Shown in pieces: positions 566-31,134 of a stretch of 64,000 nucleotides of DNA. Under the pieces are notes generated by a model. That model saw only the letters and a list, made by a program, of their open reading frames with translations, was not told the DNA's origin and searched no databases. Positions within the stretch are counted from its first letter, which is position 1; each line of letters opens with the position of its first letter. The position numbers and the translations under genes were made by a program. Origin of the DNA: Mytilus trossulus (lineage: Eukaryota); NCBI RefSeq assembly GCF_036588685.1, contig NC_086383.1:54994001-55058000 (forward strand). Direction: 5' to 3'.

Positions 566-3201
566 TATTGCAAAAGTTGAAGCAATTAGGGCAAAACTTT
601 CCGAGTAAAAAAGATCAAAATGTCTTTCTACCTTGCACATTTTAGAACATTCAGATCAGACAACGAAACTGGGTCCAGCAATATTTATAAGCAATTTAAG
701 ATTTTGACCCTCACAGTTTCCATTCACCTTCCATTCATGATAATTAAATTGAACTGTAAAACATTTCTTGATACTTTCTTAATTCCTTTGTAAGTTTCAT
801 GAAAACATAATTATGACAATAACTGTTGTGAGCACAAGATTCACTGCACACTTTTAACGTTCTGCTTCTTCAAACATTTAAATGTGATCTTAAGTTTTGA
901 GATTTTTAATCGACACGATTGAGATTTGTGTATATAAGAACATGGTTTATCTATAATATATTAGTTGAAAATGCGGCTTTGAACTAGCTTTCAGTACCTG
1001 CGAGCATTCGTTGTTCAATAATGTGTGTCTTTGTGTAATTATTTAATGTGATAAATTGTTTTGTTGGTACACCACTGTAACAATGAAGAAGGAAATGTGG
1101 AGGGTTGGTTGGGTGGAAGTGGGGAGGGGTATGCGGAGTGCTGACAAACATGTCTATGCGGCATGGGCTTTGATCATTGTTGAGGCATCAATGTAAGGGG
1201 CATTTAATATCTTAATAAAATTATTCTTATTTTAGATACTATATATTGTTCTCTGATATTGGACGAAAGATGTTGCCCTTTTATGTAACTATGTTATACA
1301 AGTTACGATCATTTGAAAACACATATTAAACAGCCAAATGGATGCACAAGAGCTAAATAGGAGTAATAGATCCTATTGACAACAAGTATCTGCCCAATTT
1401 TATTGATTTTGTAACATTTGTTTCAAATATGACCAACTTCTAATCCAAAATCACCAGCACCGTATCAGGACCCACCAGCACAATGACAGGACCCACCAGC
1501 ACAGTATCAGGACATGAGTAAATTGAGAAAATGCTAAATTTTTATAAATTGCAATGTTTTTTTTACAAAATAGTTTTGTCGTATGGATTGCGGTATAGAA
1601 AGCGGACTCTATAAGCATTTTTGTTTAATTTTTTCAGTTCGAGATTTTCTGAAAATGAGCATTTTTGTGTTACGCTTACTGAAACAGTTTAGAGGGTCAA
1701 CTTCTCAATGGTTTACATATAAACCCATAAGAAACAAAATTGAAAAATCTCAACTGTTTTCTTCCTTTTTTTTTTTAAGTGAAAACGTCAAAAATCATCA
1801 TTTTCGTCTTTGTTTACATTTTTTAATTGATCACCAGCACCCGTCAGGACCGAATCACCAGCACAGTACGTTCTCTCGCAGGACAACCATACCCACCGTG
1901 GAATTTAAAGCATCATGGGTAATTTCATTGTTCGTACCTCAAAATGAAAATAACGTCACGTCATTGGTTAAATTTCCATTGTTTAGGACGTTTTGATGTA
2001 CACTTTTGAAAATGATATTACCCAGGATGCATTAGATTCTGAAATGGCGAATTAACAAAAAGTCATCAAACCGTATGATTTTTTTTTTTTTGCACATGTG
2101 TATGTTTTGTCTTTTCATGCCTATGGTGAATGAGTAAATATTTTGAGACATTGACTGCTAGGTAAACGTATCTAAAAACATTCTTTCCATCCTCAAATTC
2201 CCTTATTAAAAATCACACATGTTTGCGTCATAATGATTATAATTTGTGTTGTACAAGATGTCTAAAACATAAATTCATTGATTTAATGTATCAAATTCAT
2301 GTACTTTTGTCTTAAAGTACTTTATAATCAGTCGTAAGGTTGTTTGAGGTTAGAGTGTAAGAAGTCGAACGTCAGACATATACATTTATTTCAGGAAGTA
2401 GAAAATATTATGTTCAGGGTGTTTAGATCTCGAGTTCGGATATTTATTGATTTTGGTACAACAAGATTTGTCTTTTGCAGTTTTGACTTTTTTTCTTGTC
2501 TTGTACAATTGTACATGGTAACCACAAGAAAGAACTCACAATACCAACTTCTGTATGTTTTTAATTAAATGGAAAAAAAAAACGTGGTAGGATTGTCAAT
2601 AAAATAAGTCTCCACCAGAGCCCAAATGACGTAGAAGATTAGCAACTATAGGTCACCTTTAACAATGAGCAAAACACGTACAGCATAGCAAGATATAATA
2701 AATGGCACCAAAAACCAATGTAAAAAATAAAACATAATCGAAAAATTGATATGAAAAAAAGAATGACCGACAACCACAGAACTACAGACTCCTGACGTGT
2801 TGCATTTTAATGTTGTGTCGTTTGTTTTCTCTTATTTTTGAGATATTAAGATAAGACGTGGCACGGTACTTGTTTATCCCAAATTCATATATTTGGTTTG
2901 GATGTTATATGTGTTTTTCTCGTGGGATTTTGTCTAATGCTTGGTCCGTTTCTGTGTGTGTTGCATTTCAGTGTTCATTGTTCATTGTTCTCCTCTTACA
3001 TTTAATGCGTTTCCCTCGGTTTTAGTTTGTTACCCCGATTTTGTTTTTTGTCCATGGATTTATGAGTTTTGAACAGCGGTATACTACTGTTGCCTTTATT
3101 TAGGACAAGCACATACAGAATGTGGCGGGGTTAAACAAATGTTCGGCGCGGTAATTATCCTCCTTATTAACATTGGACAGTAGTTTATCAGCTCATTATA
3201 T

Positions 3202-3494
3202 TATAGGGTTATTGCATGAATATTGGAGATATTGTCCCGAGTAGAATTTTATATTGCACGAGCTTGTGAGTGCAATACATGTTCTACGAGGGACAATATT
3301 CCCCGAGTTTCATGCAATAACCCTTTTATTGTATAGCAATATAATATTTGAAAGCAAAAATTGGTTTAAACTAAGATTTTAACGTTGATGACGTCATGAG
3401 TTTTGAAGATTTATTGCACTAGTGCAATATTAGAACTTATTGCACGCTAACTTTTGGTTAAAGTTCTGTGGGAAATATTATATTGATATACAAT
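3202..3494. mobile_element. Hairpin-bearing non-autonomous element; inverted partial copy at about 10915-11210
   Basis: gggttattgcatgaa...ttcatgcaataaccc folds back over about 120 nt; the matching reverse-complement sequence lies near 11120-11207. Confidence 0.6.
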
Positions 3495-3764
3495 AAAATT
3501 TGTTATTATATTCTTCCTAGATGTTACTGCACCAGTAAATTGCAAAGGTTTCTGTGCATTTGAGTGCATCCGTCAAAATAGGGTCTACGGAAATGTGGAG
3601 GACCCTACTGTTCGCGAAACTGTGACAAGTATTGACCCAACAGTATCAGTAACAAAAAAAAATGGAGCTGAGGTAGCTGTGTCAAAAACGTCTGTATGTT
3701 TTATCAGATCAAGACCATTTACCCTTATGAGGCAAGTAAAATTATTCAATTAGCATTTAAAAAT

Positions 3765-4045
3765 AGATATAGGAAGATGTGGTATGAGTGCCAATGAGAC
3801 AACTCTCCATCTAAATAACAATTTATAAAAGTAAACCATTATAGGTCAAGGTACGGCCTTCAACATGGGGCCTTGGCTCACACCGAACAGCAAGCTATAT
3901 AAATGGCCCCAAAAATTACTAATGTAAAACCATTCAAACGGAAAAACCAACAGTCTATAATCTATATAAAAACGGGAAACGTGAAACACGTATGAACTAC
4001 ACACAGACGACAACTTCTGTACATCAGATTCCTGACTTAGGACAG
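3765..4045. repeat. Abundant dispersed repeat (SINE-like, class uncertain)
   Basis: Starts with aagatgtggtatgagtgccaatgagacaact. Related copies or fragments lie at about 2585, 11498, 24785, 41100, 42335, 57010 and 60740. Confidence 0.75.
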
Positions 4046-4448
4046 GTGCAAACATTTACAGCGGAAATGTATGTGTTTTATTTGATATGATGGTTGTTTT
4101 CATTTATGTTAGAGCGCATTGAGGTAGTGGTAAGATCGCAATGTTCGCTGTACAATCGTAGTGAGCGAGTGGCGTTAGCGCTTCTAGTCTGAGAGACTTC
4201 GCACGATTTTACAACGACCTTTCTACGACCATCACGTTATCACTACAACCCAACTACGCCTCCAATACGACTATACCATGTTTATACCACGCTGTTCAAG
4301 ACCATAGTATGATTCTAGAACACACATGCCGTCCCCATCACGCTCTTCTTACGACCTGACTACGGTCATACTACGACCATCATGCTCATTTTTGTTTTCA
4401 CATGAAATACAAATGTATATAAAGAGGGGCAATACCTCTTTATGTTAA

Positions 4449-5456
4449 GGATGTCTGCTTGTCATGTTTTGGAATTTTTGTCAGATTTTCGGAATCCTCT
4501 GGTTTTATCCATTTGAATGCCTTAAAAAGATCCCCATGAACAGCTATTTTTCTTTTTATTAATCTTGCACATGTATAATTATAAGTCATTTGTAAAAGTC
4601 TTACATAATTTTATTTATTGTTTAATAGCATTTGAGAACTGTAACTGGTCAATGATAAAGCTATAAAAAATCAAGAGAGAACATTTTCCCGCCAAAATTT
4701 CAATGGCTAATATCTCGAAAACAAGCACATTAACCAATTTATTTTCTATCAATAGATACTTGTTTTATGCAGCCCAGTAGCCAGTACTTCGGTACTGGCA
4801 TGAAAATACGGATTTTTTGTGTTATTAAAATTTGCTGTTACAAGATATATGAAATTATTATAAATTAAGGAATGTATCTCCCTCATGCAAAGCTCTGATT
4901 CCTTTCACGAATTTGGCTATACTTTTTGGACCTTTTGGGTTATAGCTCTTCATCTTTTATATAAGCTTTGGATTTGAAATATTTTGGCCACGAGCATCAC
5001 TGAAGAGACATGTATTGTCGAAATGCGCATCTGGTGCAAGAAAATTGGTACCGTTAATTTTATTACTACCACTGGGTCGATGCCTCTGCTGGTGGACTAT
5101 AAGTCCCCGAGGGTATCACCAGCCCAGTAGCCAGTACTTCCGTGCTGGCATGAAAATACGGATTTTTTGTGTTATTAAAATTTGCTGTTACAAAATATAT
5201 GAAATTATTATAAATTAAGGAATGTATCTTCCTCATGCAAAGCTCTGATTCCTTTCACGAATTTGGCTATACTTTTTGGACCTTTTGGATTATAGCTCTT
5301 CATCTTTTATATAAGCTTGGATTTCAAATATTTTGGCCACGAGCATCACTGAAGAGATATGTATTGTCGAAATGCGCATCTGGTGCAAGAAAATTGATAC
5401 TGTTAATTTTATATTTATGAAAAGTTATTCATTTTGAATCTGAGCAGCAAACATCC
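4449..5456. mobile_element. Kolobok-like non-autonomous DNA transposon containing a nested ~350-bp tandem duplication
   Basis: TTAA|GGATGTCTGCT ... AGCAAACATCC|TTAA. Internal direct repeat 4770-5060 vs 5120-5410. Confidence 0.7.
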
Positions 5457-6019
5457 TTAACATGTTTTGGCCTTTTTCAAGGTGTTGTTAAACTGTCATC
5501 TGAGATAAATTTAAACTGTTAACTGTTATCAGCATTTTTGCATTTGTTGTTAACTGTTTTTGCCAAAGTCAAGGTGTTGTTAACATGTTTTTTGCCGCCG
5601 GCCCCCTTTCTATAAAAGCTCTGCATGTTTTGTGGTGAGCGTGGTGCGATCGTCGGAAAGTGTGGGGCTTTAACAAAAAACGACAGGAAATAGCGTGCAC
5701 CTTCATCAACTTCATTAAAATTATCAATTTCATACACTTTGCGGTCTTGAATAATAAACCTGTAAGTTCTATAAAACTCACTTAATCACCACCCCATCTA
5801 AAATCATGAAAAGGATAGTACATTTGTAAAAAAAAAAGTTCTTATTATCATGTCTTGATATTTTGTACAAGTATCATTTTATACTAGTCAAAACATACAT
5901 ATAGTGCCTAAGACTTACTTAATATGAGAGTTTTTAACGATCATGTCTGGCTATAAAGCCCTCGGACGCTAAGCTATTATAGTTAATTTAACACCATGTT
6001 TACATATATTTTTTTATAA

Positions 6020-6616
6020 AAGGAGAAGGAAGGTCCAGTAAGACCCCTTTTTGGCCCCAAAATATAGCAGTTTTACAAAATTGTTAAATTGTAAACTTTT
6101 AATTATTTATTGGACATAAGAATGCTTCTGTTACATAAATATGGGCTGTTTTTGACAATACAATGCAAATATATCAGGTACTATCACCATAAAATCATGC
6201 TTAATTACTGAAATCTTCACAATTCTGTCATTTTAGTTAAATGTTAGAAGGCTTTCGTGTGAAACGAAAGTGGCCGCATTCGTATTCATCCTTAATATTG
6301 AAATGTAAGTTGTATTTTATGATAATACAAAACATATATAATAAAGGTTAAAGATGAACACGGATGCGGCCACTCTCATTTTTGACAAAAACCATCTGAA
6401 AGGTGACATTATCGGCGTATTTGGTAGATTTTTCATATTTGAGCTTCAAGTTGATTCGGATCGTTTTTAATGACTAAATTAGTTAAAATCTTTCACATAA
6501 ACTACTTGATTCAAATGAAATAGACACTTTTAAAGTGTTTAAAAAGTGGTCAAAATCTTTCGTCGGATGAACCTGAAATTTGAGGCCAAAATCGGTCCTT
6601 ACCGGACCTACTCCTT
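6020..6616. mobile_element. TIR non-autonomous DNA transposon (Kolobok-like)
   Basis: The left end aaggag..aggtccagtaagaccc..tttggccccaaa matches the reverse complement of the right end tttgaggccaaaatcggtccttaccggacctactcctt. Confidence 0.6.
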
Positions 6617-6927
6617 TTTAAATATATTGTTTTATGGGTGGGTCTCTAGTGACAATTCTGCTGTACCATATTTTACAGACTTTTATTTGTACTAGTTTAG
6701 ATATGGTCCATGTTGCTTATTGTTTATCTAGTATTTTATGGATTGTTATCATTTTTTTTGTCATATCGAATGCCGTCGACTTTTTAATTAAAATACCTCT
6801 CTGACGCCCCTCTTTTAAAAGTAAAATGAAGTGCTAAAATAATTCATAGCTGCTGTAGTTATTCGTTTATGTACCTGCTATCTAATAAAATGGAAAGAAT
6901 TCAAACTGAAAACAAAAATTAGAAATC

Positions 6928-7024
6928 CAATCTAATTAAAACCGATCTCTCATCGCTCCCTCTTTCTGATATGTCGCGTGGGTCAAAAACAAGAGCGATG
7001 AAAAATCGGATTTTAATTAGATTG
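6928..7024. mobile_element. ~97-bp fold-back MITE with near-perfect 9-bp TSD (MULE-like)
   Basis: ttagaaatc|caatctaattaaaaccgat...atcggattttaattagattg|ttagaaaac; related to 52864-52962. Confidence 0.7.
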
Positions 7025-8264
7025 TTAGAAAACAAAACAGTTTTACTGGCCATGATATAAAACTGCTATATTTCCGTTGTCTATGATGTTGTCTCAATGC
7101 TGTTGTTTTATTTACAGACGGGATATTCCAGACAACAACACACATTCTGAATACAGATGTTCTAAAAACACGAATTGTGACGCCTCCGGTGATATTTTAA
7201 CATTCTTCCAATCTCCTTGGAGTAAGATAAGAACCATTACATGTTTTATAATATAGAAATACAGGAGATATATATTGGCCACATGCTGACAAATCTACTC
7301 ATAACTAAAGAATATGTTACATTTGGATAACATTTTGTAATGATTAATTTATTTTTTCATTTTTGTTCGTGAATTTGACTTTTAGTAGGAGGAAAATATA
7401 AAGTTGAAGTATTTTCTCCGAAAAACTTTAATGAAGAAAAAACTGTTTCACAAGTTACAGCTTAAAACAGCTTAAACGCATACGCCTAACGGGCAAGATT
7501 AACATCATGTAATGTAATCGAATTATCTATCAACAGTTCCGTAAAACATGGACGCAAACCACGTGACGCAAACGTCTGCGTTGAATACCTATTGATGGCA
7601 TTGGGTGCTGTCTTTTACTTTGACACACTATACGTTTCCTTTTTCTATGCTTTACTGAATGAATATTACAAAATATTTTTAATCCAATTGCAGAAGTGTT
7701 TCTAAACAACCCTCATTTCTGTGACGTCTGCAATGGTGTTGATTTGTCGTCCAGGCTTGTCATGTTAGGTAAATATTCTTTAAAGTTGTAACAAGAAACT
7801 TTCTTTTTCAAACAGAACTATGTAAACAAATCATTAGACATTATATTACATACATATGCATAATCACTTTTCAATGCCGCTCTTTTTCTAATTTTAGAAC
7901 ATGGGAGACACAAGAGCAAAGAAATTTCAAATTAGGGATCAAATTGAAAGGTTGTATACCTACGAATTCAAATTCGGACGAATTACAAATTATTGTCTTG
8001 CAAGATTTGGTTTCCAGTTTTTCTGTATTTTTATTTTTTAATGGTCCATTTAACTATATTAATTCGGATAAACCCCATAGACACACTCCTACATAAAACA
8101 AAATGCGATAACAAGTCTAGCCGATAGTATTAAATATGAAGCTTCATGTAAATGAAGTGTCTTGCATTCTGTGCATAAAAGAACATTTTCAAAAAGTAGT
8201 TGAGTATCTGAGCATGACCTGTTGCAAGGGCGAATATATTCCCTACCTTATTTTAAAATAACCT

Positions 8265-9235
8265 CCTTTTCCAGTCAATCGGTAATTCTCTGTTGAATCT
8301 GCTACTCTCCTTCTTAGGGTACGGAATCGGCCGAGTTGTGACGAATGCTTTTCCAATATCAAGTGGTAATCCTCGGGTGAATCCGCTACTCTCCTTCTTA
8401 GGGTACGGAAACGGCCGAGTTGATACGAATGCTTTTCCAATATCAAGTGGTAATCCTCGGGTGAATCCGCTACTCTCCTTCTTAGGGTACGGAAACGGCC
8501 GAGTTGATACGAATGCTTTTCCAATATCAAGTGGTAATCCTCGGGTGAATCCGCTACTCTCCTTCTTAGGGTACGGAAACGGCCGAGTTGATACGAATGC
8601 TTTTCCAATATCAAGTGGTAATCCTCGGGTGAATCCGCTACTCTCCTTCTTAGGGTACGGAAACGGCCGAGTTGATACGAATGCTTTTCCAATATCAAGT
8701 GGTAATCCTCGGGTGAATCCGCTACTCTCCTTCTTAGGGTACGGAAACGGCCGAGTTGATACGAATGCTTTTCCAATATCAAGTGGTAATCCTCGGGTGA
8801 ATCCGCTACTCTCCTTCTTAGGGTACGGAAACGGCCGAGTTGATACGAATGCTTTTCCAATATCAAGTGGTAATCCTCGGGTGAATCCGCTACTCTCCTT
8901 CTTAGGGTACGGAAACGGCCGAGTTGATACGAATGCTTTTCCAATATCAAGTGGTAATCCTCGGGTGAATCCGCTACTCTCCTTCTTAGGGTACGGAAAC
9001 GGCCGAGTTGATACGAATGCTTTTCCAATATCAAGTGGTAATCCTCGGGTGAATCCGCTACTCTCCTTCTTAGGGTACGGAAACGGCCGAGTTGATACGA
9101 ATGCTTTTCCAATATCAAGTGGTAATCCTCGGGTGAATCCGCTACTCTTCTTCTTATGGTATGGAATCGGCCGAATTGATACGAATGCTATTCTAGTCAA
9201 TCCGCAATCCTCGAGTGAACCTGCTTCTCTTCTTC
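8265..9235. repeat. 84-bp minisatellite, about 11.5 nearly identical copies
   Basis: gaatgcttttcc recurs at 8343, 8427, 8511 ... 9099 (exact 84-nt period) with degenerate edge units. Three long repetitive ORFs cross it. Confidence 0.97.
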
Positions 9236-9398: not shown

Positions 9399-12300
9399 AT
9401 GTGAAAGTCCGTGAGTATTTTATTCTTCTTACATTTTGTCAGATTGTAATGTTTTACTTCAGAGGCTATTATAATGAACGTAATAACATATAAGCGAAAC
9501 TAGATTACAGATTTGTGGGAAAATCAACGATCGATAAGAATATTATATTTAAATAGCATTATTCAGAGGAATCAGAAAAGGGGGAAAGGGGAAGGCAATA
9601 AGAAAGAAAAAAGAGGTACTTAAATATATAAATATTTTCACGATTTGTTCAGTTCATTGCCGTTTAACTCAAGATTTTTAGTTAATTGGTAATTTTTTGT
9701 TTCTGCGTAAGGTATACAATTGATGATATGATAGGAATTATTAAGAATCTTTATTAGTATAAATTAACATACAATGACATCATCAACGACATTGATACTA
9801 CATAATATCGAACGCAGAAAAAAAACAGTAAAGTAAACTTCTGAACTATATAAGGTACGGGAAAACAGTTATCGTCCCTTTCCGAATTAATTTCTTCATG
9901 TTTTTACATTATAGATCTACCATCTTGACTATTTTCTCTCGGAATATGTTTTTTTTTATCTATATAAAGTAGTCAACAAAAGAAACGATACACGACTTTG
10001 AAATAAAATTTATCAAAAAGTATTAAATATAAAACAAAATGAGATACACTATTTTAAAAAGCTTTCATTTGCAATTTGTTTGCACATGTGATAATAAAAA
10101 TCAAAACTTGTTGGAAAGTATCTAAATTCCGTGTAAACGATCATAGTGTGCAAATTAGTTTTGCGGAAAGTTGAATGAAAAATCGACACATAATTTTCTA
10201 AGTATTGAAAAAAAATCAAATTTGTTAAAAAATCTTCAATTTGCTAATCAAGTTATGTTCATGTTGTAACTAATGGCTTGAATGATGGTTTTTCAATTTT
10301 TTGGGAAAAAAGTGTTTTTTGAAATCTTTTATTTTTTTTTATTTTTGTCTCAAATCAATGCTTTAGATATGAAACAACACACAGTAAATTTGGAACCTTT
10401 CGGATTAGTTTTAAGATTGTTGCCGCTTTTTGAATATCACTTTACACATACTGTCTATGGTAAATCAGTTGATAAATGTATACATTTCAACGATTTCTCG
10501 TGGGGCCGAACTTTGCCTTTAAAATAAACGAAGAAACTGTATGATTTTTAAAAACAATTTGATGGCAAACACTGTCTTTACCTTCAAATGAGAGGTTGGC
10601 ATCCTTAGTTAGAACTTCTGTTTTTAAAATTGTCGTTTTATGTTAATTTTGTAAAAAAAAACAAATCGCGAAAAACGTCACGAAAGCAAAACATTTTTTT
10701 TTTTTTAAACGGATTTATGATTCCATAATGATTAAGTATTAATACCTTCAATATTGGTCCAATGAACGGAAAACTTTATCTTTTATTTGAAAAAAAATCT
10801 TGTATCGTTTCTTTTGTCGACTAGTATATATATATACATAATTATAATAGTTTTACGTGTATATATTATTATATATTGTTTTTCAGATTGTGAAATACGT
10901 AAGTATAATGAATATTATTGTATAGCAATATAATATTTCCCACAGAAAGTAATCAAAATTTAGCGTGCAATAAGTATAGATTATCATATACTTGAATGAA
11001 ATATGACTAAAATTTTACAGTTCAATAACTATGCTATGACAGGATTACTAGGTATATCCATCAGATTCCTACGAATTTCCTCAGTGGGCTGATAAAGGAA
11101 CCTTTATTGACTGCTTGCAAGAATATTGGGAAATATTGTCCCTCGTAGCTCGTGCAATATAAAATTCTACTCGGGATAATATTCCCCAATATTTCATCAA
11201 TAACCTATATAATAGGAAATCTATATTTCTATTTTTATTTCTTTTTCTTGATCATATGTTGTATGCGATTGATACATTATATCTACATGTAGCTGCAATC
11301 GCTCTTTTTGTCTTTACCTTTCAAAATTCGACACACAAAAAAAATATAAGTATAAATAAAAAACAACCCACAAAAAAATTATAAGTATAAATAAAAAACA
11401 AAACAACAACGTTTAATTATCAAGAGGGGGCGAAAGATACCAGAGAAAACAGTCAACATTATAAATCCAATTATGATATGAATAGAACATAAGTAGCTTG
11501 TTGTTCGGTGTGAGCCAAGGCTCCGTGTTGACGGCCGTACATTGCCCTATAATGGTTTACTTTTATAAATTGTTATTTGGATGGAGAGTTGTCTCATTGG
11601 CACTCATACCACATATTCCTACATCTATTAAAAGCTGCATGAAATATTGTTTTAGGGAGCTACCATTTATATTTTTACAAGGATAAAATTTTAAAAAGAA
11701 GCAGGACAGGAGTTTTGAGTAAAATCAAATGGTAGCTCCCTTAGTACTATCGGGTAGGTCAAGTGTGTCAGCTGATTAGAGTAAACTTGAGAGTTTAGAA
11801 TAAGAAACTTAGAAAATCTGCATTAATAAAACGATAGCAATTATCTGCCAATTGTCGGTATGATTTTTTTCCTGTTTAATTGTACTTGTTCATTTTCTTT
11901 TGCAAGATATTGATGAAAATCGTCGACCAACGAAAATCTGTGGCAGAACTGTACCTAAAGGTAAGAAAATAACTTAAGGATGTACTGAGAAGAAGTTAAG
12001 GATTTTTTTTTCGAATCTTCGGACTCATTGGATTTTCCCTTCGATACAGGATAAAATATTTTGCTCTATACCAACTATTTTTCTTTTCATATAAGACTTC
12101 AATTATAGCTCATGAAAGATGATTAACCAAAATTTAAGCAGGTTGTTGATTTATTTTCTTTCGATTTGAAACCCAATACCAATGCAAATGTAAGGTAAAA
12201 GTCCGGGTCACCCTTTCCCTTCACTTTTAGAAACTTAAAAATATCGAAAAGAAGATTGAAAACCTATCAATATTTGTAGCTTACTTTTTTCTTATCTAAT

Positions 12301-14126
12301 GCTCTTCTGACTTATAGTGTTAATTTTAAAGTATTTTTTAGAATCACCTTAGTACATCCTTAAGATTACAAACACATCCAAAAAGTCTGTATGATTGAGT
12401 TTATATCTTTTTTATATATACACATAAAATTCTATGTTTACGCTACCATGTCATGCGCTCTTTTTCATAACAGTCGTGTAGGGTGTTTTCTACTTCATTT
12501 CAATTTATTAACATGCGTGTAAATATGGTCATCTTCACAAATGTTTAAAAGTTGTTTTACAATATAAAGCGTTGTAAATTCACTCTTTGATATGTTTGTA
12601 AAAATGTATTTTTTTCTCCAGAAACAAGGTTAGTCATCTCTATTCATACACCGTATATTTTGCAATCGATACATTGTAACTTGGCATATATTTTAATCCT
12701 GAAAAATTAAACTTTGTTCGAGAAATTCAAATCTTGTTAAATTACAGATTTTCTGCCCACGCTTTTATTACAATGATTAAACAACACTCCGTTCTACCTT
12801 CTGTCCATGTAAATATATACATCAGCCAATGAAATTACAGCTTGCAAATTTTTAAAAGGGTGAATTATTTATTTACAACAAAACTAGAGAATCCCGAAGG
12901 GTCTAAGCGAAAAAGAAAGAACGGACCGTTGTCTGAGCGCCGACAGAGCCGTGAAAGTGATAGTTGGTCGAAGGATGTATGTTAAAATCAGATATCTGAA
13001 ATTAATAGTTGTTTTATTTCTAGACGTTGGGTGTAACTTACCTTTGGTGTGCCCTGTGACAATGGCGGGACAAAAACATTGTGGATGCCACGAATTGAGT
13101 ATTTATGACGACGGGTTTTGCTGTCCTAAGAGGAATGAATCTGTACATCACTATTACAAGGACAATACGTACACTAAGCCGAACGTTTACATAAAACAAC
13201 CGACATCAACATACACTAAGCCGAAAGTTTACATAAAACAACCGACTTCAGTATACACTAAGCCGAAAGTTTACATAAAACAACCGACCGCAACATACTT
13301 TAAGCCGAAAGTTTACATAAAACAACCGACATCAACATACACTAAACCGAAAGTTTACATAAAACAACCGACCTCAACATACACTAAGCCGAAAGTTTAC
13401 ATAAAACAACCGACCGCAACATACTTTAAACCGAAAGTTTACATAAAACAACCGACCTCAACATACTTTAAGCCGAAAGTTTACATAAAACAACCGACAT
13501 CAACATACACTAAACCGAAAGTTTACATAAAACAACCGACATCAACATACACTAAACCGGAAGTTTACATAAAACAACCGACCTCAACATACACAAAGCC
13601 GAAATATTACAGAAACCAACAGTCTAGAACATACTATAAGCCGAAATCTTACAGAAACCAACAGTCCAGAACATACTATAAGCCGAAATCTTACAGAAAC
13701 CATCAGTCCAGAACATACTATAAGCCTACTTCTTACATTAAACAACAACCCAAAACATACTATAAACCGAAATCTTACAGAAACCAACAGTCCAGAACAT
13801 ACTATAAGCCGAAATCTTATAGAAACCATCAGTCCAGAACATACTTTAAGCCTAAATCTTACATTAAACAACAACCCAAAAAATACTATAAACCGAAATC
13901 TTACAGAAACATACAGTCCAGAACATACTATAAGCCGAAATCTTACAGAAACCAACAGTCGAGAACATACTATAAGCCGAAATCTTACAGAAACCAACAG
14001 TCCAGAACATACTATAAGCCGAAATCTTACAGAAACCAACAGTCCAGAACATACTATAAGCCAAACTTTAGAAGAAGCAACAACTGGAACTTCCAAAGAA
14101 GAAGAAGGTATAGAAGAAGAGGCTGA
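9399..14126 (+). CDS. Cys-rich + Tyr/Lys/Arg tandem-repeat protein, mussel foot/byssal protein-like (3' part; N-terminus unresolved)
   Basis: Exons 9399-9410 and 10887-10898 (12-nt micro-exons), 11907-11960 and 13024-14126, all phase 1. They read ..VKVHCEIHIDENRRPTKICGRTVPKDVGCNLPLVCPVTMAGQKHCGCHELSIYDDGFCCPKR.., then 10x YTKPKVYIKQPTST-type and 11x YYKPKSYRNQQSRT-type units and an Arg-rich tail. AATAAA at 14156. The last exon is solid; the upstream exons and the functional call are less certain. Confidence 0.75.
11978..12359. mobile_element. Kolobok-like MITE in intron
   Basis: TTAA|GGATGTACT ... AGTACATCC|TTAA, just downstream of the splice donor at 11961. Confidence 0.7.
13170..14062 (+). 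repeat. Coding 42-bp tandem repeat (21 full units, two sub-types)
   Basis: The period is 42 nt from TAC at 13170 to TAC at 14052. Many differences are at third codon positions (aag/aaa, aca/acc/act), consistent with coding constraint. Confidence 0.95.
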
Positions 14127-14155: not shown

Positions 14156-14161
14156 AATAAA
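14156..14161 (+). promoter_or_regulatory. Polyadenylation signal of the repeat-protein gene
   Basis: AATAAA 30 nt after the TGA stop. Confidence 0.6.
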
Positions 14162-15364: not shown

Positions 15365-15699
15365 TGGCATGACAGAATTATTTCGATTCTAATAGGAATA
15401 TTTTGAACTTTTGTACTTTAAAGCGGACCTATATTAGACACTCGCAATGTCGCCATTTTGATATGATGAACAAAAACGTTATAGAAAAATCTCAACAGTT
15501 TATCATTAAAAAAGAACAGAAACATTTAAACTTACTTTTATAATGTTTTTATTTAATTTCCTAGCGAGCAACACCAATAAAATGTCCATTTTGATCTCGC
15601 GTTGTTCAAAACTTACCGGACGTTGCAATTTCAATTGTGACGTCAATCACGTGTAGCCATGTTCTATTCGAATTAGAACATGGCTTTGTATCCATGATG

Positions 15700-17176
15700 A
15701 TGATATGACGAACTCGTTGGTGAGATGACGAACTCGTTAATGAGATGACGTTTTCGTTGGTGAGATGCCGAACTCATTAATGAAATGACGTTTTCGTTGG
15801 TGAGATGAAGAACTCGTTAATGAGATGACGTACTAGTTGGTGAGATGACGAACTCGTTGGTGAGATGACGAACTCGTTGGTCAGATGACGAACTCGTTAA
15901 TGAGATGACGAACTCGTTAATGAGATGACGTACTCGTTTGTGAGATGACGAACTCGTTGGTGAGATGACGAACTCGTTGGAGAGATGGCGAACTCGTTGG
16001 TGAGATGACAAACTAGTTAATGAGATGACAAACTCGATAATGAGATTACGAATTAGTTGATGAGATGACGAACTCGTTGATCAGATGACGAATTAGTTGA
16101 TGAAATGACAAACTCGTTGATGAAATGACGAACTCGTTAATGAGATGAAAACTCGATAATGAGATTACGAATTAGTTGATGAGATGACGAACTCGTTAAT
16201 GAGATGCCGAACTCGTTAATGAGATGACGAACTCGTTATTGAGGTGACAAACTCGTTAATCAGATGACGAATTAGTTGATGAAATGACAAACTCGTTGAT
16301 GTGATAACAAACTCGTTGGTGAGATGACGAACTCGTTGATAAGATGACGAATGCGTTGATGAAACGAAAAACTCGTTGATGTGATAAAACACTCGTTGAT
16401 GTGATAAAACACTCGTTGGTGAGTTGACGAACTCGTTAATGAGGTGTCGAACTCGTTGATAAGATGACGAACTCGTTGAAGATATGACGAACTCGCTTAT
16501 GAGATGACGAACTTGTTGGTGAGATGACGAACTCGTTTGTGAGATGACGAACTCGTTGGAGAGATGACTAACTCGTTGGTGAGATGACAAACTCGTTAAT
16601 GAGATGAAAAACTCGAAAATGAGATTACGAATTAGTTGATGAGATGACGAACTCGTTGATCAGATGACGAAATAGTTGATGAAATGACAAACTCGTTGAT
16701 GAAATGACGAACTCGTTGATGAAATGACGAACTCGTTAATGAGATGAAAACTCGTTAATGAGATGAAAACTCGTTAATGAGATGAAAACTCGATAATGAG
16801 ATTACGAATTAGTTGATGAGAAGACGAACTCGTTAATGAGATGCCGAACTCGTTAATGAGATGACGAACTCGTTATTGAGGTGACAAACTCGTTAATCAG
16901 ATGACGAATTAGTTGAAGAAATGACAAACTCGTTGATGTGATAACAAACTCGTTGGTGAGATGACGAACTCGTTGGTAAGATGACGAATGCGTTGATGAA
17001 ACGAAAAACTCGTTGATGTGATAAAACACTCGTTGATGTGATAAAACACTCGTTGGTGAGTTGACGAACTCGTTGATGAGGTGTCGAACTCGTTGATAAG
17101 ATGACGAACTCGTTGAAGATATGACGAACTCGCTTATGAGATGACGAACTAGTTGATGAGACGACGAACTCGTTGA
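15700..17176. repeat. 20-bp satellite (gagatgacgaactcgttgat) with a ~640-bp higher-order duplication
   Basis: About 1.5 kb of 19-20-nt units. The variant series starting at 16201 recurs at 16838. Confidence 0.97.
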
Positions 17177-17248: not shown

Positions 17249-20200
17249 TTATGAGGCAAGAATTTCGTGGCACTTTCCTGTGAGTCCAGTACACCTACAG
17301 AGTTTTCCTTCGTGTATAATGTCCTTAAAGGCTGGGAATAGGTGACCCTCTATCATACAGTTTGGTCCTAAAATGAAAAAATGCAATTACATTGGAAATC
17401 TTAAGAACATTCAAATTTCAAACACTTACAAATGTATAACAGGACTTTAAAGGCACTGACCACCCTTCTTGTGTTTGATAGAACCAGTTGTGGATTCAGG
17501 AGGGGGTCCGGAGGTTGGAACCCCCTTTTTTGGGCCGATCAATGCATTTGAATGGGATGGGAGCATATAGTTTGAACCCCCCCTTTTTTTAAATGGTCGG
17601 ATCCGCGCCTGAGAACCAATATGTTAAAGGAAAAATATTTTCCTCACAAAAGATGAATTTTCGATGTAGAAGTCGTTCCTTTAAAATGGTATCAAGACAA
17701 GAAACGGGGTAATGATAGAACCATGATTATTAAAATGTATTAACTATAATATACATTATATATGATCACTCACCATTTGGACAGGACTCGCAACAGGCTC
17801 CTTTAAGAAGGACCCGATCAGCACATGGTTGCATTGGACATGGTAAAGGATGACAGTAATGCTGGCCACCTTGTTCACAAGGGTACGGACAGTCTGTAGT
17901 ATCTTTACGTATTGCTGCAGTTGTTACCATCGTATCTGAAGAAAGATCCAAAACATAAAGTTAGATAGAAAAAATATTTATCAAAACTCATCACATATTA
18001 TGTATACTAAATTAATACCACTCGACATATTCTTTACACTTTCTTTGATCAATAAAATAGGCGTGTGCTTGTTAAGATGGACGGTGATATATCAAAAAAT
18101 ATTTAAGCATACACTAATTAATAAGAAAGAATGTAATAATAATATAGTGCGCATTTGTAGAACAAGAAAAAAACCCAGACCAAAATGAGAATGAAAGGTG
18201 TATATTACCAACAGTATACATAGAAAAACAACATTCCTTTCTACTAGTACATATGATAAGTTGCTTGGTCGATAAGACGATAACAATAAAAGTATAACAA
18301 GTGGTCTTCATTGTGGCCGTACAGTTGAGGTTGATCTTTTTTATTATCGCCATAGAGTGCTGGTGGTCATTGCTACTGTTCGATAGAGGGCTTTATGTCA
18401 TCGTTGTCGATCCCCATTATGTGCTATTGGTCATTGTTATAGCTATAAAGTGTCGTTCGTCATCGTTTTTTTTTATAGTGCTGTTGGTCATCGTTATCGC
18501 CATAGAGTGCTGTTGGTCATCGTTATCGGCATAGAGTGCTGTTGGTCATCGTTGTCGCCATAAAAGTGCTGTTGGTCATCGTTATCGCCATAGAGTGCTG
18601 TTGGTCATCGTTATCGCCATTATAGTGCTGTTGGTAATCGATATCACCATAGAGTGCTGTTGGTCATCGTTATCGCCATAAAGTGGTGTTGGTCATTGTT
18701 ATCGCCATATAGTGCTGTTGATCATCGTTATCGCCATTATAGTGCTGTTGGTCATCGTTATCGCAATTAAAGTGCTGTTGGTCTTCGTTATCGCCATAGA
18801 GTGCTGTTGGTCATCGTTATCACCATTATAGTGCTGTTGGTCATCGTTATCGCCATAGAGTGCTGTTGGTCATCGTTATCGCCATATAGTGCTGTTGTTC
18901 ATCGTTATCGCCATTATAGTGCTGTTGGTCATCGTTATCGCCATTAAAGTGCCGTTGGTCATCGTTATCGCCATATAGTGGTGTTGGTCATTGTTATCGC
19001 CATATAGTGCTGTTGGTCATCGTGATCCCCATTATGTGCTATTGGTCATTGTTATAGCTATAAAGTGTCGTTCGTCATCGTTTTTTTTTATAGTGCTGTT
19101 GGTCATCGTTATCGCCATAGAGTGCTGCTGGTCATCGTTATCGCCATAGAGTGCTGTTGGTCATCGTTATCGCCATAAAGTGCTGTTGGTCATCGTTGTC
19201 GCCATAAAAGTGCTGTTGGTCATCGTTATCGGCATAGAGTGCTGTTGGTCATCGTTGTCGCCATAAAAGTGCTGTTGGTCATCGTTATCGCCATAGAGTG
19301 CTGTTGGTCATCGTTATCGCCATTATAGTGCTGTTGGTAATCGATATCACCATAGAGTGCTGTTGGTCATCGTTATCACCATAAAGTGGTGTTGGTCATT
19401 GTTATCGCCATATAGTGCTGTTGATCATCGTTATCGCCATTATAGTGCTGTTGGTCATCGTTATCGCAATTAAAGTGCTGTTGGTCTTCGTTATCGCCAT
19501 AGAGTGCTGTTGGTCATCGTTATCACCATTATAGTGCTGTTGGTCATCGTTATCGCCATAGAGTGCTGTTGGTCATCGTTATCGCCATATAGTGCTGTTG
19601 TTCATCGTTATCGCCATTATAGTGCTGTTGGTCATCGTTATCGCCATTAAAGTGCCGTTGGTCATCGTTATCGCCATATAGTGGTGTTGGTCATTGTTAT
19701 CGCCATATAGTGCTGTTGGTCATCGTGATCGCCATATAGTGCTGTTGGTCATCGTTATCACCATAGAGTGTTATTGGTCATCGTTATCGCCTTAGTGTGC
19801 TGTTTGTCAACGTTATCGCCATAGTGCTGTTGGTCGTCGTTATCGCCATAGAGTGCTGTTGTTCATCGTTGTCGCCTAAATTTGCTATTTGTCATCGTTA
19901 TCGAATTATAGTGTTGTTGGTCATCGTTATCGCCATAGAGTGTTGTTGGTCATCGTTTTCGCCATATAGTGCTGATCGTCATCGGTTTTTTGCATTTAGT
20001 GCTGTTGATCATCGTTATCACAATAGAGTGTTATTGGTCATCGTTATAGCCATAAAGTGATGTTGGTCATCTGTATTGTCATATAGTGCTGTTGTTCATC
20101 GTTATCGCCATATAGTACTATTGGTAATCGTTATCGTCGTGGAGTGCCGGTTGTCATCGTTAGCGTCATATAGTGCAGGGTTGCGTTCAATATCGTAGCA

Positions 20201-21089: not shown

Positions 21090-22004
21090 TTCTCTGAAGT
21101 ATACGATTATTTTAACGAATATAACTTAACCTTTTTTTCTATTGATAAAAACTTGACAATATATAATTTAATGTTGATCTTATATTTTGTGGGCATAATG
21201 ATTACATGCATGTCTAATGAACAGTTGTCTCATTGGCCATTATAACGTTACATTTATTCTTATTTTTGAATTAGCGGTGTAGTTTTGTTCATTGTTGAAA
21301 GCCGTACGATGATCTATTTTTGTTAACTTCTACGTCAATTTTGTCTCTGGTGTGGTGTTGTCTAATTAATTGCAATCTTGTCACATCTTCTTTCTTCTAT
21401 ACAGCATACTTAGTGTCGAATACTTACGTTTAGGACACTGTGGACAGCATGTTCCCTCTATTGTCACAGGGTCGTCGCACGGAGGTTTAGGGCACGGGAT
21501 CGGTCCACAGAAATGACTCCCACCTTGTTTGCATGGATGTGGACAGTCTGGTGTATTTGGACATACCGGACAGCATGCGCCGTATGGTACAAAAGAATTA
21601 TTACACGGAGGTGCCGGACAAGGAATCGGCCTGCAATACCTCTTTCCTCCTTGCATACATGGGTGAGGACAATCGGTTCCATTTTTGCACTCTGCGCAGC
21701 AGGCGCCCGTTGGAGTAACAGGGTTGTCACACGGAGCTAGCTTAGGACATGGTATTGGTTCACAAAAGTGCCTACCACCTTGTGTACATGGGTGAGGACA
21801 ATCAGTGCTGTTCGGACATACTGGGCAACAAGCACCCTCTGGTGTGAATGAGTTGTTACAAGGCGGAAGAGGACACGGTATAGGGTGGCAGTATCGATGC
21901 CCTCCCTGCGTACACGGATGTGGACAACTCTCTAGTAAACCATAGGTTATTCCAAGTAAAGCTGTTAAGGTTAATCCATATAAGGACAATACATTCGTCG
22001 CCAT
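17249..22004 (-). CDS. Secreted Cys-rich protein with six truncated VWC-like repeats (kielin/chordin/brorin-like), about 326 aa
   Basis: Exons 22004-21428, 20775-20653, 17935-17774 and 17367-17249 have GT-AG phase-1 introns and total 981 nt in frame. Signal peptide MATNVLSLYGLTLTALLGITYG; repeats CPHPCxQGGxxxCxPxPCPxxxCxxxxxxxGxCCxxC; C-terminal GPNC...CRC...C half-domain. AATAAA on the - strand at 17218-17213. Confidence 0.9.
18290..20465. repeat. 29-30-bp satellite (agtgctgttggtcatcgttatcgccatag) in intron 2 of the VWC gene
   Basis: About 2.1 kb of tandem units. The variant block at 18412 recurs at 19027 (higher-order duplication). Confidence 0.97.
20176..20347. mobile_element. Fold-back MITE inserted in the satellite (CAGGG termini, hAT-like)
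   Basis: cagggttgcgttcaatatcgtagcagctac...gtagctgctatgatattgaacgcaaccctg; satellite units continue on both sides. Confidence 0.8.
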
Positions 22005-31087: not shown

Positions 31088-31134
31088 TCTGACTGCGACT
31101 AACTTCTGAAAGAAACACAACATTTGTCAGAAGA

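What the first reader, a model, noticed from the sequence alone, without database searches (positions are those of the whole stretch)
13024..14126. Candidate new mussel adhesive/byssal protein: two-block 14-mer Tyr/Lys/Arg repeat behind a Cys-rich head
Seen: 21 tandem 14-aa units form two blocks. The first ten are Thr/Pro-rich (YTKPKVYIKQPTST) and the next eleven Tyr/Arg/Gln-rich (YYKPKSYRNQQSRT). They contain only one acidic residue and end in RRRRYRRRG. Established: mussel foot protein-1 uses Tyr/Lys/Pro tandem repeats (AKPSYPPTYK and YKPK variants) whose Tyr is converted to DOPA, and adjacent Tyr and Lys promote wet adhesion. Inference: this is a secreted DOPA-type cationic block-copolymer protein. 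Its 14-mer period and Cys-rich head differ from the mfp-1 decapeptide, and I do not recognise this repeat.
Basis: partly seen in the sequence, partly recalled or inferred. Interest (0 to 1): 0.8.

Follow-up and report, generated by a model that had tools for sequence, protein, structure and literature searches.

The report
Mussel secreted protein with sticky tail
The stretch is the last exon of a mussel gene: a small secreted cysteine-rich protein, from a family found so far only in Mytilus, that has gained a 318-residue, strongly positive, tyrosine-rich repeat tail resembling mussel glue proteins, but whether it is in the byssus is untested.

Summary
Positions 13170-14051 hold 21 tandem 42-bp (14-aa) units in two blocks, in the only frame open through the whole exon, ending in RRRRYRRRG.

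The stretch is the terminal exon of a gene with at least five coding exons. Exon 1 lies 3.5 kb upstream of the window and encodes a signal peptide.

That domain belongs to an unannotated family found here only in Mytilus. At least nine paralogous loci in this genome end 1-27 residues after the head's Cys-Cys position. The repeat tail is therefore an addition to one member. M. coruscus shares it (period 14, core KPKSY..Q).

Differences between units concentrate at third codon positions of this frame, which indicates selection on the protein. The tail has 17% Tyr, 25% Lys+Arg, net charge +81 and pI 10.4.

It is not mfp-1. A DOPA, adhesive or byssal role is plausible but untested, because run metadata were coded. 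An internal alternative 5' exon also gives transcripts without the signal-peptide exon.

No paper in the searchable library mentions the repeat or its relatives. Verdict: a real, probably undescribed, mfp-like candidate of unproven function.

The parts
3521..3731 (+). Coding exon 2 (211 nt), the N-terminal part of the family domain (VTAPVNCKGFCAFEC...CFIRSRPFTLM). Phase 1 in, phase 2 out. It is followed by a GC donor (AG|GCAAGT at 3732).
   Evidence: tblastn of M. coruscus P0001: 68% identity. phmmer against 1.84 billion proteins finds only P0004 and P0001. An X1 contig lies on 3519-3731 and runs on for 32 letters at its upstream end. Only the GC donor keeps the frame and reproduces FTL(M/V)RRDIPD.
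5711..5761 (+). The 3' part of an alternative, apparently non-coding 5' exon (donor CCT|GTAAGT at 5762). TATAAAAG lies at 5611-5618. It is spliced to the exon 3 acceptor at 7118 and bypasses exons 1 and 2.
   Evidence: Joint 5761->7118 with GT..AG ends, one contig each in X2 and X4, 51 letters on the shorter side. The region is single copy in the genome. There is an in-frame TGA at 5748-5750 and no ATG in the exon.
7118..7221 (+). Coding exon 3 (104 nt): RDIPDNNTHSEYRCSKNTNCDASGDILTFFQSPW. Phase 2 in, phase 1 out.
   Evidence: tblastn of P0001: 71% identity. The acceptor at 7118 is used in RNA contigs. Paralogous exons lie on C9, C1 and C10.
7694..7768 (+). Coding exon 3b (75 nt): (K)VFLNNPHFCDVCNGVDLSSRLVML(D). 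Phase 1 in and out. Acceptor gcag|, donor TTAG|GTAAAT.
   Evidence: 92% identical to M. edulis P0004 residues 124-148. Sequence read. Present in all full-length paralogs P0005-P0009. Absent from the M. coruscus model P0001.
9399..9410 (+). Candidate 12-nt micro-exon (ag|ATGTGAAAGTCC|GTGAGT), phase 1 in and out. Inclusion not established.
   Evidence: The terminal part of M. edulis model P0004 starts at the homologous place. Sequence read.
11907..11960 (+). Candidate 54-nt exon (IDENRRPTKICGRTVPK), phase 1 in and out, with a strong acceptor and donor. Inclusion not established.
   Evidence: Identical over 17 residues to the segment just before the Cys module in M. galloprovincialis model P0002. 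Sequence read.
13024..13169 (+). Start of the terminal exon: the family's C-terminal Cys module (VGCNLPLVCPVTMAGQKHCGCHELSIYDDGFCC) plus the linker PKRNESVHHYYKDNT. An in-frame ATG lies at 13062.
   Evidence: Sixteen head-like loci in the own genome. Nine were inspected and each ends 1-27 aa after the position of the CC motif. 88% identical to P0002 and conserved in P0001.
13170..13589 (+). Repeat block 1: ten units of YTKPKVYIKQPTST (Lys 20%, Thr 19%, Tyr 14%, Pro 14%).
   Evidence: The single-sequence AF2 model gives pLDDT 72-89 as a two-strand-per-unit beta-solenoid, which is possibly an artefact (PMC11795689).
13590..14051 (+). Repeat block 2: eleven units of YYKPKSYRNQQSRT (Tyr 21%, Lys 17%, Arg 12%, Gln 12%, Ser 12%).
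   Evidence: Differences between units fall at codon positions 1/2/3 as 3/8/15. Synonymous codon differences number 64, against 6 and 20 in the other two frames. AF2 pLDDT is about 30.
14052..14126 (+). Degenerate 22nd unit and Arg-rich end (YYKPNFRRSNNWNFQRRRRYRRRG), then the TGA stop.
   Evidence: pI 12, 38% Arg.
14156..14161 (+). AATAAA polyadenylation signal, 30 nt after the stop codon.
   Evidence: Read directly from the sequence.

Best explanation
Shown:
- 13024-14126 is the terminal exon of a gene with at least five coding exons. The genome is probably Mytilus trossulus.
- Exon 1 is at L013:6452-6512, which is window -3548 to -3488. It encodes MMSLGFIILFSFYLGSTCAS.
- Exons 2, 3 and 3b plus the first about 35 codons of the terminal exon encode a domain of about 180 aa with 14 Cys. 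It belongs to an orphan family of small (155-201 aa) proteins found so far only in Mytilus. Their gene models start with hydrophobic signal-like N-termini.
- In this gene and its M. coruscus ortholog the family's C-terminus has been extended. Here the extension is a 318-aa tail of 14-residue repeats in two blocks.
- The predicted mature protein is 497 aa, about 59.5 kDa, with net charge +80.

Inferred:
- The protein is exported.
- The tail acts as a polycationic, Tyr-rich sticky and cross-linkable polymer. Every Tyr lies within two residues of Lys or Arg. This favours cation-pi cohesion, coacervation and binding to anionic surfaces or polymers.
- If tyrosinase acts on the tail, it would also allow DOPA-based adhesion and curing.
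- Block 1 is rich in beta-formers (V, Y, I, T) with Pro every 7 residues, so it may be ordered. Block 2 has a Tyr/Arg sticker and Gln/Ser/Asn spacer composition and is probably disordered.
- The globular Cys domain would supply a specific binding or oligomerising end.
- The most likely setting is a tanned extracellular secretion: the byssus or foot first, the periostracum second.
For: - Gene model. The phases of all junctions fit (1, 2, 1, 1) and reproduce ortholog and paralog sequence across each junction.
- Signal-peptide exon. It is nearly identical to that of M. edulis P0004 and similar to that of M. coruscus P0001.
- RNA contigs. One lies on exon 2 within two letters of both predicted ends, including the GC donor, and the exon 3 acceptor is used. 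Probable RNA runs from several studies hold 20-36% of the sampled words of the terminal exon.
- Family. Paralogous exon sets lie on C1, C9 (two) and C10 (two), with further head-like exons elsewhere. All nine inspected stop 1-27 aa after the position of the CC motif. Annotated paralogs exist in M. edulis, M. trossulus, M. galloprovincialis and M. coruscus.
- Constraint on the tail. Variation between units is enriched at third codon positions and is synonymous only in this frame. M. coruscus keeps period 14 and the core KPKSY..Q in the same frame.
- Composition. Tyr 17%, Lys 17%, Arg 8%, Pro 11%, pI 10.4, and 55 of 55 Tyr next to Lys or Arg. For comparison, MFP-1 has pI 10.5, a Tyr/Lys/Pro decapeptide and 15 mol% Dopa, and the unmodified repeat self-coacervates through Lys-Tyr cation-pi contacts (PMC9999432).
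- Other features. There are N-glycosylation sequons in exon 3 and in the head, and AATAAA 30 nt after the stop.
Against: - There is no tissue, proteomic or modification evidence of any kind, because run names and tissues were coded.
The only E3-acceptor junction shown comes from an alternative 5' exon at 5761 that bypasses the signal peptide.
- The ESM Atlas holds a record that starts at the Met at 13062, which is a model without a signal peptide.
- The M. edulis RefSeq model P0004 stops before the terminal exon.
- The M. galloprovincialis model P0002 reads block 2 in the other open frame, which gives an acidic repeat.
- Tyr is less conserved than Lys in M. coruscus (12% Tyr, with some Tyr->His). 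That is not what a strict DOPA function would predict.
- The signal peptide was judged by eye. No predictor was available.
Confidence: 0.5

Rival explanations
1. It is a secreted immune or polyanion-binding effector. The orphan family of small, fast-evolving, tandemly duplicated Cys-rich proteins would be a defence family, as many Mytilus-specific Cys-rich families are. The cationic tail would bind microbial surfaces, glycans or nucleic acids rather than build a material.
For: There are many lineage-specific paralogs in tandem clusters with quickly diverging sequences. Several paralogs carry short basic Tyr/Arg tails, for example ...KVQRSTRRYRYNRY. The tail has net charge +81. Weak fold resemblance to small ligand-binding beta-barrels.
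Against: A 318-aa regular repeat with 17% Tyr and 11% Pro is unlike known mussel antimicrobial peptides. No match to any defence family in Pfam. The fold matches are below the noise level (Z 6.7 or less, pLDDT 52).
Confidence: 0.15
2. The relevant product is the isoform without a signal peptide. Transcription from the internal promoter (TATAAAAG at 5611) through exon 3 into the terminal exon would give a protein starting at Met 13062. This would be an intracellular, extremely basic Tyr/Lys/Arg protein, for example a protamine-like nuclear protein, or simply a non-productive transcript.
For: Joint 5761->7118 in two runs, from a single-copy region. The Atlas record begins exactly at that Met. 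The end RRRRYRRRG is Arg-rich. Met is also present at this position in M. coruscus.
Against: This ORF would cut the conserved six-Cys module in half. Two short uORF-like ATGs precede it. M. galloprovincialis has Lys instead of this Met. The family architecture and the M. coruscus model join the tail to a signal peptide. Known Mytilus sperm basic proteins are not Tyr-rich (own knowledge). Both runs come from one study.
Confidence: 0.12
3. It is a shell, periostracum or other mantle matrix protein. The basic Tyr-rich tail would be tanned into periostracum or would interact with acidic shell-matrix components and chitin.
For: The same compositional arguments as for the byssus apply. Periostracum is a DOPA-tanned, Tyr-rich secretion and basic Lys-rich matrix proteins exist in bivalve shells (own knowledge).
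Against: No Gly-rich or acidic motifs typical of shell-matrix proteins. No hit in the literature searches. No expression data.
Confidence: 0.15
4. It is a recent, functionally neutral repeat expansion at the 3' end of one family member. The open frame would persist only because a stop-free unit was copied.
For: The units are very similar at the DNA level (88% matches). The array is unique in the genome. Related species' gene models disagree: P0004 lacks the tail and P0002 uses another frame. Tail sequence differs strongly between species (42-48% identity).
Against: Third-position and synonymous bias is specific to this frame. Period 14 and the core KPKSY..Q are retained in M. coruscus in the same frame. 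Two differentiated blocks imply a longer history than one burst.
Confidence: 0.08

Closest known systems
Mussel foot protein 1 (mfp-1, the byssal cuticle protein)
   Same: Secreted. Long tandem array of short Tyr/Lys/Pro-rich units. pI about 10.4-10.5. Tyr flanked by Lys. Thr/Ser present (PMC9999432).
   Different: The period is 14, not 10. There is no PPTYK or SYPP motif. Pro is 11% rather than about 30%. There are two distinct blocks, the second rich in Arg, Gln and Asn. The array is attached to a 180-aa Cys-rich globular domain. About 59 kDa against about 110 kDa. No sequence similarity was detected by any search.
Orphan Mytilus family of small secreted Cys-rich proteins (XP_071121216 and XP_071133593 of M. 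edulis, XP_063416875 of M. trossulus, VDI52892 of M. galloprovincialis; all 'uncharacterized')
   Same: Same exon structure and motifs: PVNYKGxCAFxC...DPT...NG...CFxRSGPF; (R)DIPGNxTHSxYxC...SPW; NxPxxCDVCxGxD; GCNIPxVCPVTxxGQxxCxC...DDGxCC. Hydrophobic signal-like N-termini.
   Different: All nine other members inspected stop 1-27 residues after the position of the CC motif. Only this gene and its M. coruscus ortholog carry the long repeat tail.
M. coruscus CAC5414782.1 / A0A6J8E5E1 (unnamed protein, 337 aa)
   Same: It is the ortholog, with a signal peptide, the same domain (68-71% identity in exons 2-3) and a 14-residue cationic repeat with core KPKSY..Q in the same frame.
   Different: The tail is shorter (about 11 units) and forms one block. 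It is much richer in Lys (31%) and poorer in Tyr (12%), with Trp-containing variants and no Arg-rich end. The model skips exon 3b.
Perna viridis foot protein 1 (Pvfp-1); from my own knowledge, not tested here
   Same: A byssal coating protein built of two different blocks of tandem repeats.
   Different: Decapeptide repeats with modified Trp rather than Tyr. Different sequence.

Membership tests
mfp-1 (mussel foot protein 1) | Tandem decapeptides of the AKPSYPPTYK type | tested here: not met
   The units are 14 residues (42 bp), YTKPKVYIKQPTST and YYKPKSYRNQQSRT. The only related proteins found are the M. coruscus ortholog and a mis-framed M. galloprovincialis model of the same gene.
mfp-1 (mussel foot protein 1) | Tyr converted to DOPA and Pro to Hyp in the mature protein | not testable with these tools
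   Needs mass spectrometry or amino-acid analysis.
mfp-1 (mussel foot protein 1) | Made in foot glands and located in the byssus | not testable with these tools
   Run organisms, samples and studies were coded. Literature and supplement look-ups by accession found nothing.
Orphan Mytilus secreted Cys-rich family (P0005-P0009) | N-terminal signal peptide | tested here: met
   Exon 1 encodes MMSLGFIILFSFYLGSTCAS with donor CAG|GT in phase 1. Judged by eye: hydrophobic core FIILFSFYL, with small residues at -3 and -1.
Orphan Mytilus secreted Cys-rich family (P0005-P0009) | The conserved exon 2, 3 and 3b motifs, in the same order and phases | tested here: met
Orphan Mytilus secreted Cys-rich family (P0005-P0009) | C-terminal module GCN[IL]PxVCPVTxxGQxxCxC...DDGxCC on the last exon | tested here: met
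   The module is present. Unlike in the other members, it is followed by 331 further residues.
VWC (von Willebrand factor type C) domain, as in the neighbouring gene | Match to Pfam PF00093 | tested here: not met
   No VWC hit for the terminal exon, P0001 or the paralogs. The neighbour at 21381-22004 does hit (E 6e-8).
Calycin / lipocalin-avidin-like beta-barrel fold | Eight-stranded up-and-down barrel with a significant structural match | tested here: inconclusive
   AF2 model of paralog P0005: pLDDT 51.6, core 60-79. Foldseek best E is 0.1. VIA-align best Z is 6.7, which the tool states is below its noise level of 7-8.
Protamine-like sperm nuclear basic proteins | No signal peptide, with an Arg/Lys/Ser/Ala-rich composition | tested here: inconclusive
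   The canonical model has a signal peptide, but an isoform that bypasses it exists. The composition is 17% Tyr and about 1% Ala, unlike such proteins.

The most novel reading that the evidence does not exclude
This would be a previously undescribed class of mussel holdfast or coating protein. An orphan disulfide-rich globular domain found only in Mytilus is fused to a two-block polycationic Tyr-rich polymer: a beta-prone Thr/Pro/Lys block plus a disordered Tyr/Arg/Gln 'sticker-spacer' block. In effect it would be a natural block copolymer with a folded anchor. The tail evolved de novo by repeat expansion at the C-terminus of one family member, and an internal promoter may provide a second, non-secreted form.
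Probability: 0.3. Interest if true: 0.7.

Novelty: new variant of a known kind. Interest (0 to 1): 0.5.

Why it matters
Mussel foot proteins are the main natural model for wet adhesives and self-healing coatings, and their known catalogue is small. If this is a byssal component, it would be a new design: a folded Cys-rich anchor followed by two chemically different cationic Tyr-rich blocks.

The locus also shows how such a material protein can arise. A tandem repeat was appended to the C-terminus of an ordinary member of a lineage-specific secreted family. Paralogs without tails in the same genome and a diverged tail in M. coruscus are available for comparison.

If it is not byssal, it is still the first handle on an unannotated family of at least ten Mytilus genes.

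Tried and rejected
- Pfam on the terminal exon, P0001 and the paralogs: nothing above noise.
- PDB sequence profile search: nothing.
- ESM Atlas by features: no usable hit, twice.
- phmmer of exon 2 against 1.84 billion representatives: only the two orthologs.
- The other 113 own-genome matches to the tail. The top hits examined (L002-L005) are unrelated low-complexity repeats, so they were rejected as paralogs of the array.
- A look-alike 'signal exon' at 1655-1711. Rejected because no donor fits phase 1. The real exon 1 is upstream of the window.
- The GT donor at 3736. Rejected because it breaks the frame. The GC donor at 3732 fits, and the RNA contig ends there.
- Literature searches by repeat motifs, by nine protein accessions and by XP/LOC identifiers: zero papers.
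- Supplements of two byssus papers: nothing or not held.
- DeMartini et al. 2017 (PMC5493799), the main catalogue of new foot proteins, is not held. Identity to one of its proteins cannot be excluded.
- The AF2 beta-solenoid for block 1 is not accepted as evidence of structure, because AF2 over-predicts solenoids on perfect repeats (PMC11795689). Foldseek on that model found only generic solenoids.
- Read laying could be used once.
Length, mass and charge come from sums over the separate exons.
Full report
**1. The observation**

The window is AT-rich animal DNA (GC about 0.33).

- TRF reports a 42-bp tandem array at 13170-14070 with 21.5 copies, 88% matches and a 126-bp higher-order period.
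- An open frame runs from 12951 to the TGA at 14124-14126.
- An AG acceptor at 13022-13023, preceded by a T-rich tract, places the exon start at 13024 in phase 1.
- Translated from 13026, the exon reads:
  - a Cys-rich stretch, VGCNLPLVCPVTMAGQKHCGCHELSIYDDGFCC;
  - a linker;
  - ten units of YTKPKVYIKQPTST;
  - eleven units of YYKPKSYRNQQSRT (unit 11 is a hybrid; units 14 and 17 are a YIKQQPK variant);
  - a degenerate unit;
  - QRRRRYRRRG.
- Only one acidic residue lies in the repeats.

**2. Which frame codes**

- Only the frame starting at 13026 is open through the whole exon. The frame starting at 13024 has a stop in every block-1 unit, but it is open through block 2, where it reads TETNSPEHTISRNL.
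- In block 2 the differences between units fall at codon positions 1/2/3 as 3/8/15. There are 64 synonymous pairwise codon differences in this frame, against 6 and 20 in the other two frames.
- The M. coruscus ortholog uses the same frame.
- The M. galloprovincialis model VDI68993 (P0002) is a chimera with a retroelement. It lacks block 1 and reads block 2 in the other frame. I take this as an annotation or assembly problem, but only proteomics can settle it.

**3. The gene**

Two database relatives of the exon were informative.

- P0001 (M. coruscus CAC5414782, 337 aa) has a signal peptide, a region of about 100 aa, the same Cys stretch and a 14-residue repeat SKPKSYKKQKSKAY.
- tblastn of P0001 on the window places exon 2 at 3521-3731 and exon 3 at 7118-7221.
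- The frame is kept only if exon 2 ends at a GC donor (AG|GCAAGT, 3732). This reproduces FTLMRRDIPD, against FTLVRRDIPD in M. coruscus.
- The signal-peptide exon is not in the window. It lies at L013:6452-6512, 3.5 kb upstream of the window start. It reads MMSLGFIILFSFYLGSTCAS with donor CAG|GTATTT in phase 1.
- A phmmer scan of 1.84 billion proteins with exon 2 found only P0001 and P0004 (M. edulis XP_071143841).
- P0004 and the paralogs revealed a further exon, 3b, at 7694-7768: (K)VFLNNPHFCDVCNGVDLSSRLVML(D).

All junction phases fit (1, 2, 1, 1). The coding length is 61+211+104+75+1103 = 1554 nt, or 517 aa.

Two small phase-1/phase-1 exons proposed in the scan's neighbouring note have partial support:

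- 9399-9410, from the start of P0004's terminal part;
- 11907-11960, identical over 17 residues to P0002.

Including or skipping them, or skipping exon 3b as in P0001, never changes the frame of the terminal exon. Mass (59.5 kDa mature), Cys count (14) and net charge (+80) are sums over the separate exons.

**4. RNA evidence**

- Contigs of probable RNA runs from several studies hold 20-36% of the sampled words of the terminal exon. Organisms, samples and studies were coded, so no tissue could be read.
- Reads were laid on 1400-7399, avoiding the long arrays.
- An X1 contig lies on 3519-3731 and continues for 32 letters at its upstream end. This supports both predicted ends of exon 2, including the GC donor. 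The two extra matching letters are the AG shared by the end of exon 1 and the acceptor.
- In X2 and X4 a contig joins 5761 to 7118 with GT..AG ends. So the exon 3 acceptor is used, but from an unexpected exon.
- That exon ends at CCT|GTAAGT. It has TATAAAAG at 5611-5618, no ATG and an in-frame stop. It is single copy in the genome.
- Such transcripts lack exons 1 and 2. If exon 3b is skipped, their first in-frame ATG is at 13062 (MAGQKHC...).
- The ESM Atlas holds a record that starts exactly there. An annotated model without a signal peptide therefore probably exists.
- The 3731->7118 and E3b->E4 joints were not seen. Only 15 of 149 joints were listed, and the terminal exon lay outside the stretch.

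**5. The family**

Own-genome searches with each exon found paralogous sets on C1, C9 (two) and C10 (two), plus further head-like exons. There are 16 head-like loci in all.

- In all nine inspected, the frame stops 1-27 residues after the position of the CC motif, for example ...DDGLCCDRSGSS*...NGFCCDDMP*...DGFCCE*.
- A profile search returned full-length paralogs of 155-201 aa from M. edulis, M. trossulus and M. galloprovincialis. Cluster look-up added M. coruscus members. All are 'uncharacterized' and none has a Pfam domain.
- Three exons on G000 C1 are 100% identical to M. trossulus XP_063416875, so the genome is probably M. trossulus.
The repeat is a tail added to one member.
- No other copy of the array exists in the genome. 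The top own-genome matches examined are unrelated low-complexity repeats.
- The fold of the domain is unresolved. AF2 on paralog P0005 with a 22-row alignment gives pLDDT 51.6, with an all-beta core at 60-79. The best structural matches are small up-and-down barrels (avidin-like and lipocalin-like), at Foldseek E 0.1 and VIA Z 6.7. Both are below significance.

**6. The tail**

| Region | Composition | Other |
|---|---|---|
| Whole tail, 318 aa | Tyr 17%, Lys 17%, Thr 12%, Pro 11%, Gln 9%, Ser 9%, Arg 8% | pI 10.4, net charge +81 |
| Block 1 | Lys 20%, Thr 19%, Tyr 14%, Pro 14%, plus Val/Ile | Pro every 7 residues |
| Block 2 | Tyr 21%, Lys 17%, Arg/Gln/Ser 12% each | |
| Last 24 residues | Arg 38% | pI 12 |

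- All 55 Tyr lie within two residues of Lys or Arg.
- Single-sequence AF2 models block 1 as a regular solenoid with two strands per unit (pLDDT 72-89) and block 2 as disordered (pLDDT about 30). AF2 is documented to give confident but unrealistic solenoids for perfect repeats (PMC11795689). I keep only the contrast between the two blocks as a lead.
- The M. coruscus tail keeps period 14 and KPKSY..Q. It is Lys 31% and Tyr 12%, with Trp variants. Charge and period are therefore more conserved than Tyr.

**7. Mechanism and comparison**

- Shown: the exon codes, belongs to a gene whose canonical form has a signal peptide, and carries a constrained polycationic Tyr-rich repeat.
- Inferred: export, and use of the tail as a cohesive, adsorptive and possibly DOPA-cross-linkable polymer held by a folded Cys domain.
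- The closest functional analogue is MFP-1: decapeptide A-K-P-S-Y-P-P-T-Y-K, pI 10.5, 15 mol% Dopa, byssal cuticle. The unmodified repeat self-coacervates by Lys-Tyr cation-pi contacts (PMC9999432).
- It is not a member of that family. The period, motif, Pro content, block structure and attached domain all differ.
- Rivals are a defence or polyanion-binding effector, the isoform without a signal peptide, a mantle or periostracum matrix protein, and a neutral expansion. None can be excluded without tissue or protein data.

**8. Novelty and verdict**

- No paper in 8.4 million full texts contains the unit motifs or any accession of the orthologs or paralogs.
- The key catalogue of new foot proteins (DeMartini et al. 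2017) is not held.
- I rate it a real, probably undescribed variant of the mussel Tyr/Lys repeat-protein kind, with an unusual origin and architecture.
- The 'adhesive/byssal' label remains a hypothesis, at about 0.35-0.4 on its own. It is about 0.5 for 'secreted structural or tanned-secretion protein'.

Noticed in passing
window 5611-5761 and 7118: An alternative, apparently non-coding 5' exon (TATAAAAG at 5611-5618, donor at 5762) inside intron 2 is spliced to exon 3 in two runs. This gives transcripts without the signal-peptide exon. The ESM Atlas holds a record starting at the Met at 13062.
   Followed up: partly
window 9399-9410 and 11907-11960: Two of the micro-exons proposed in the neighbouring note (12 nt and 54 nt) have good splice sites, are phase 1 in and out, and match parts of the M. 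edulis (XP_071143841) and M. galloprovincialis (VDI68993) gene models. Their inclusion in this species was not tested.
   Followed up: partly
window 3732-3737: The intron after exon 2 is a GC-AG intron (AG|GCAAGT). The GT four bases downstream would break the frame.
   Followed up: yes
window 8281-9193: An 84-bp x 10.9 tandem array (98% identical) lies in the intron between exon 3b and the terminal exon. It is open in several frames on both strands, so it looks like a satellite rather than coding sequence.
   Followed up: no
window 21381-22004 (- strand): A single-exon ORF of 207 aa with a hydrophobic signal-like N-terminus and four VWC-like Cys-rich repeats (Pfam PF00093, E 6e-8). It is a second small secreted Cys-rich protein, 7 kb downstream.
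   Followed up: partly
window 15698-17176 and 18421-20176: Two long short-period arrays (20 bp x 74 and 29 bp x 60) lie just downstream of the gene.
   Followed up: no
window 29993-31123 (- strand): A 376-aa intronless ORF with several hydrophobic segments, which looks like a seven-transmembrane receptor.
   Followed up: no
L031 (G000:C6:37097650-37097766) and L030 (G000:C9:62781800-62781934): Two family paralogs end in short basic Tyr/Arg tails (...KVQRSTRRYRYNRY*, ...CCDSKTKRIYRTKE*). These may be the kind of seed from which the long tail grew.
   Followed up: no
G000 C1:6.72-6.73 Mb (L016, L034, L024): The exons of this paralog are 100% identical to M. trossulus XP_063416875, which indicates that the scanned genome is Mytilus trossulus.
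   Followed up: yes
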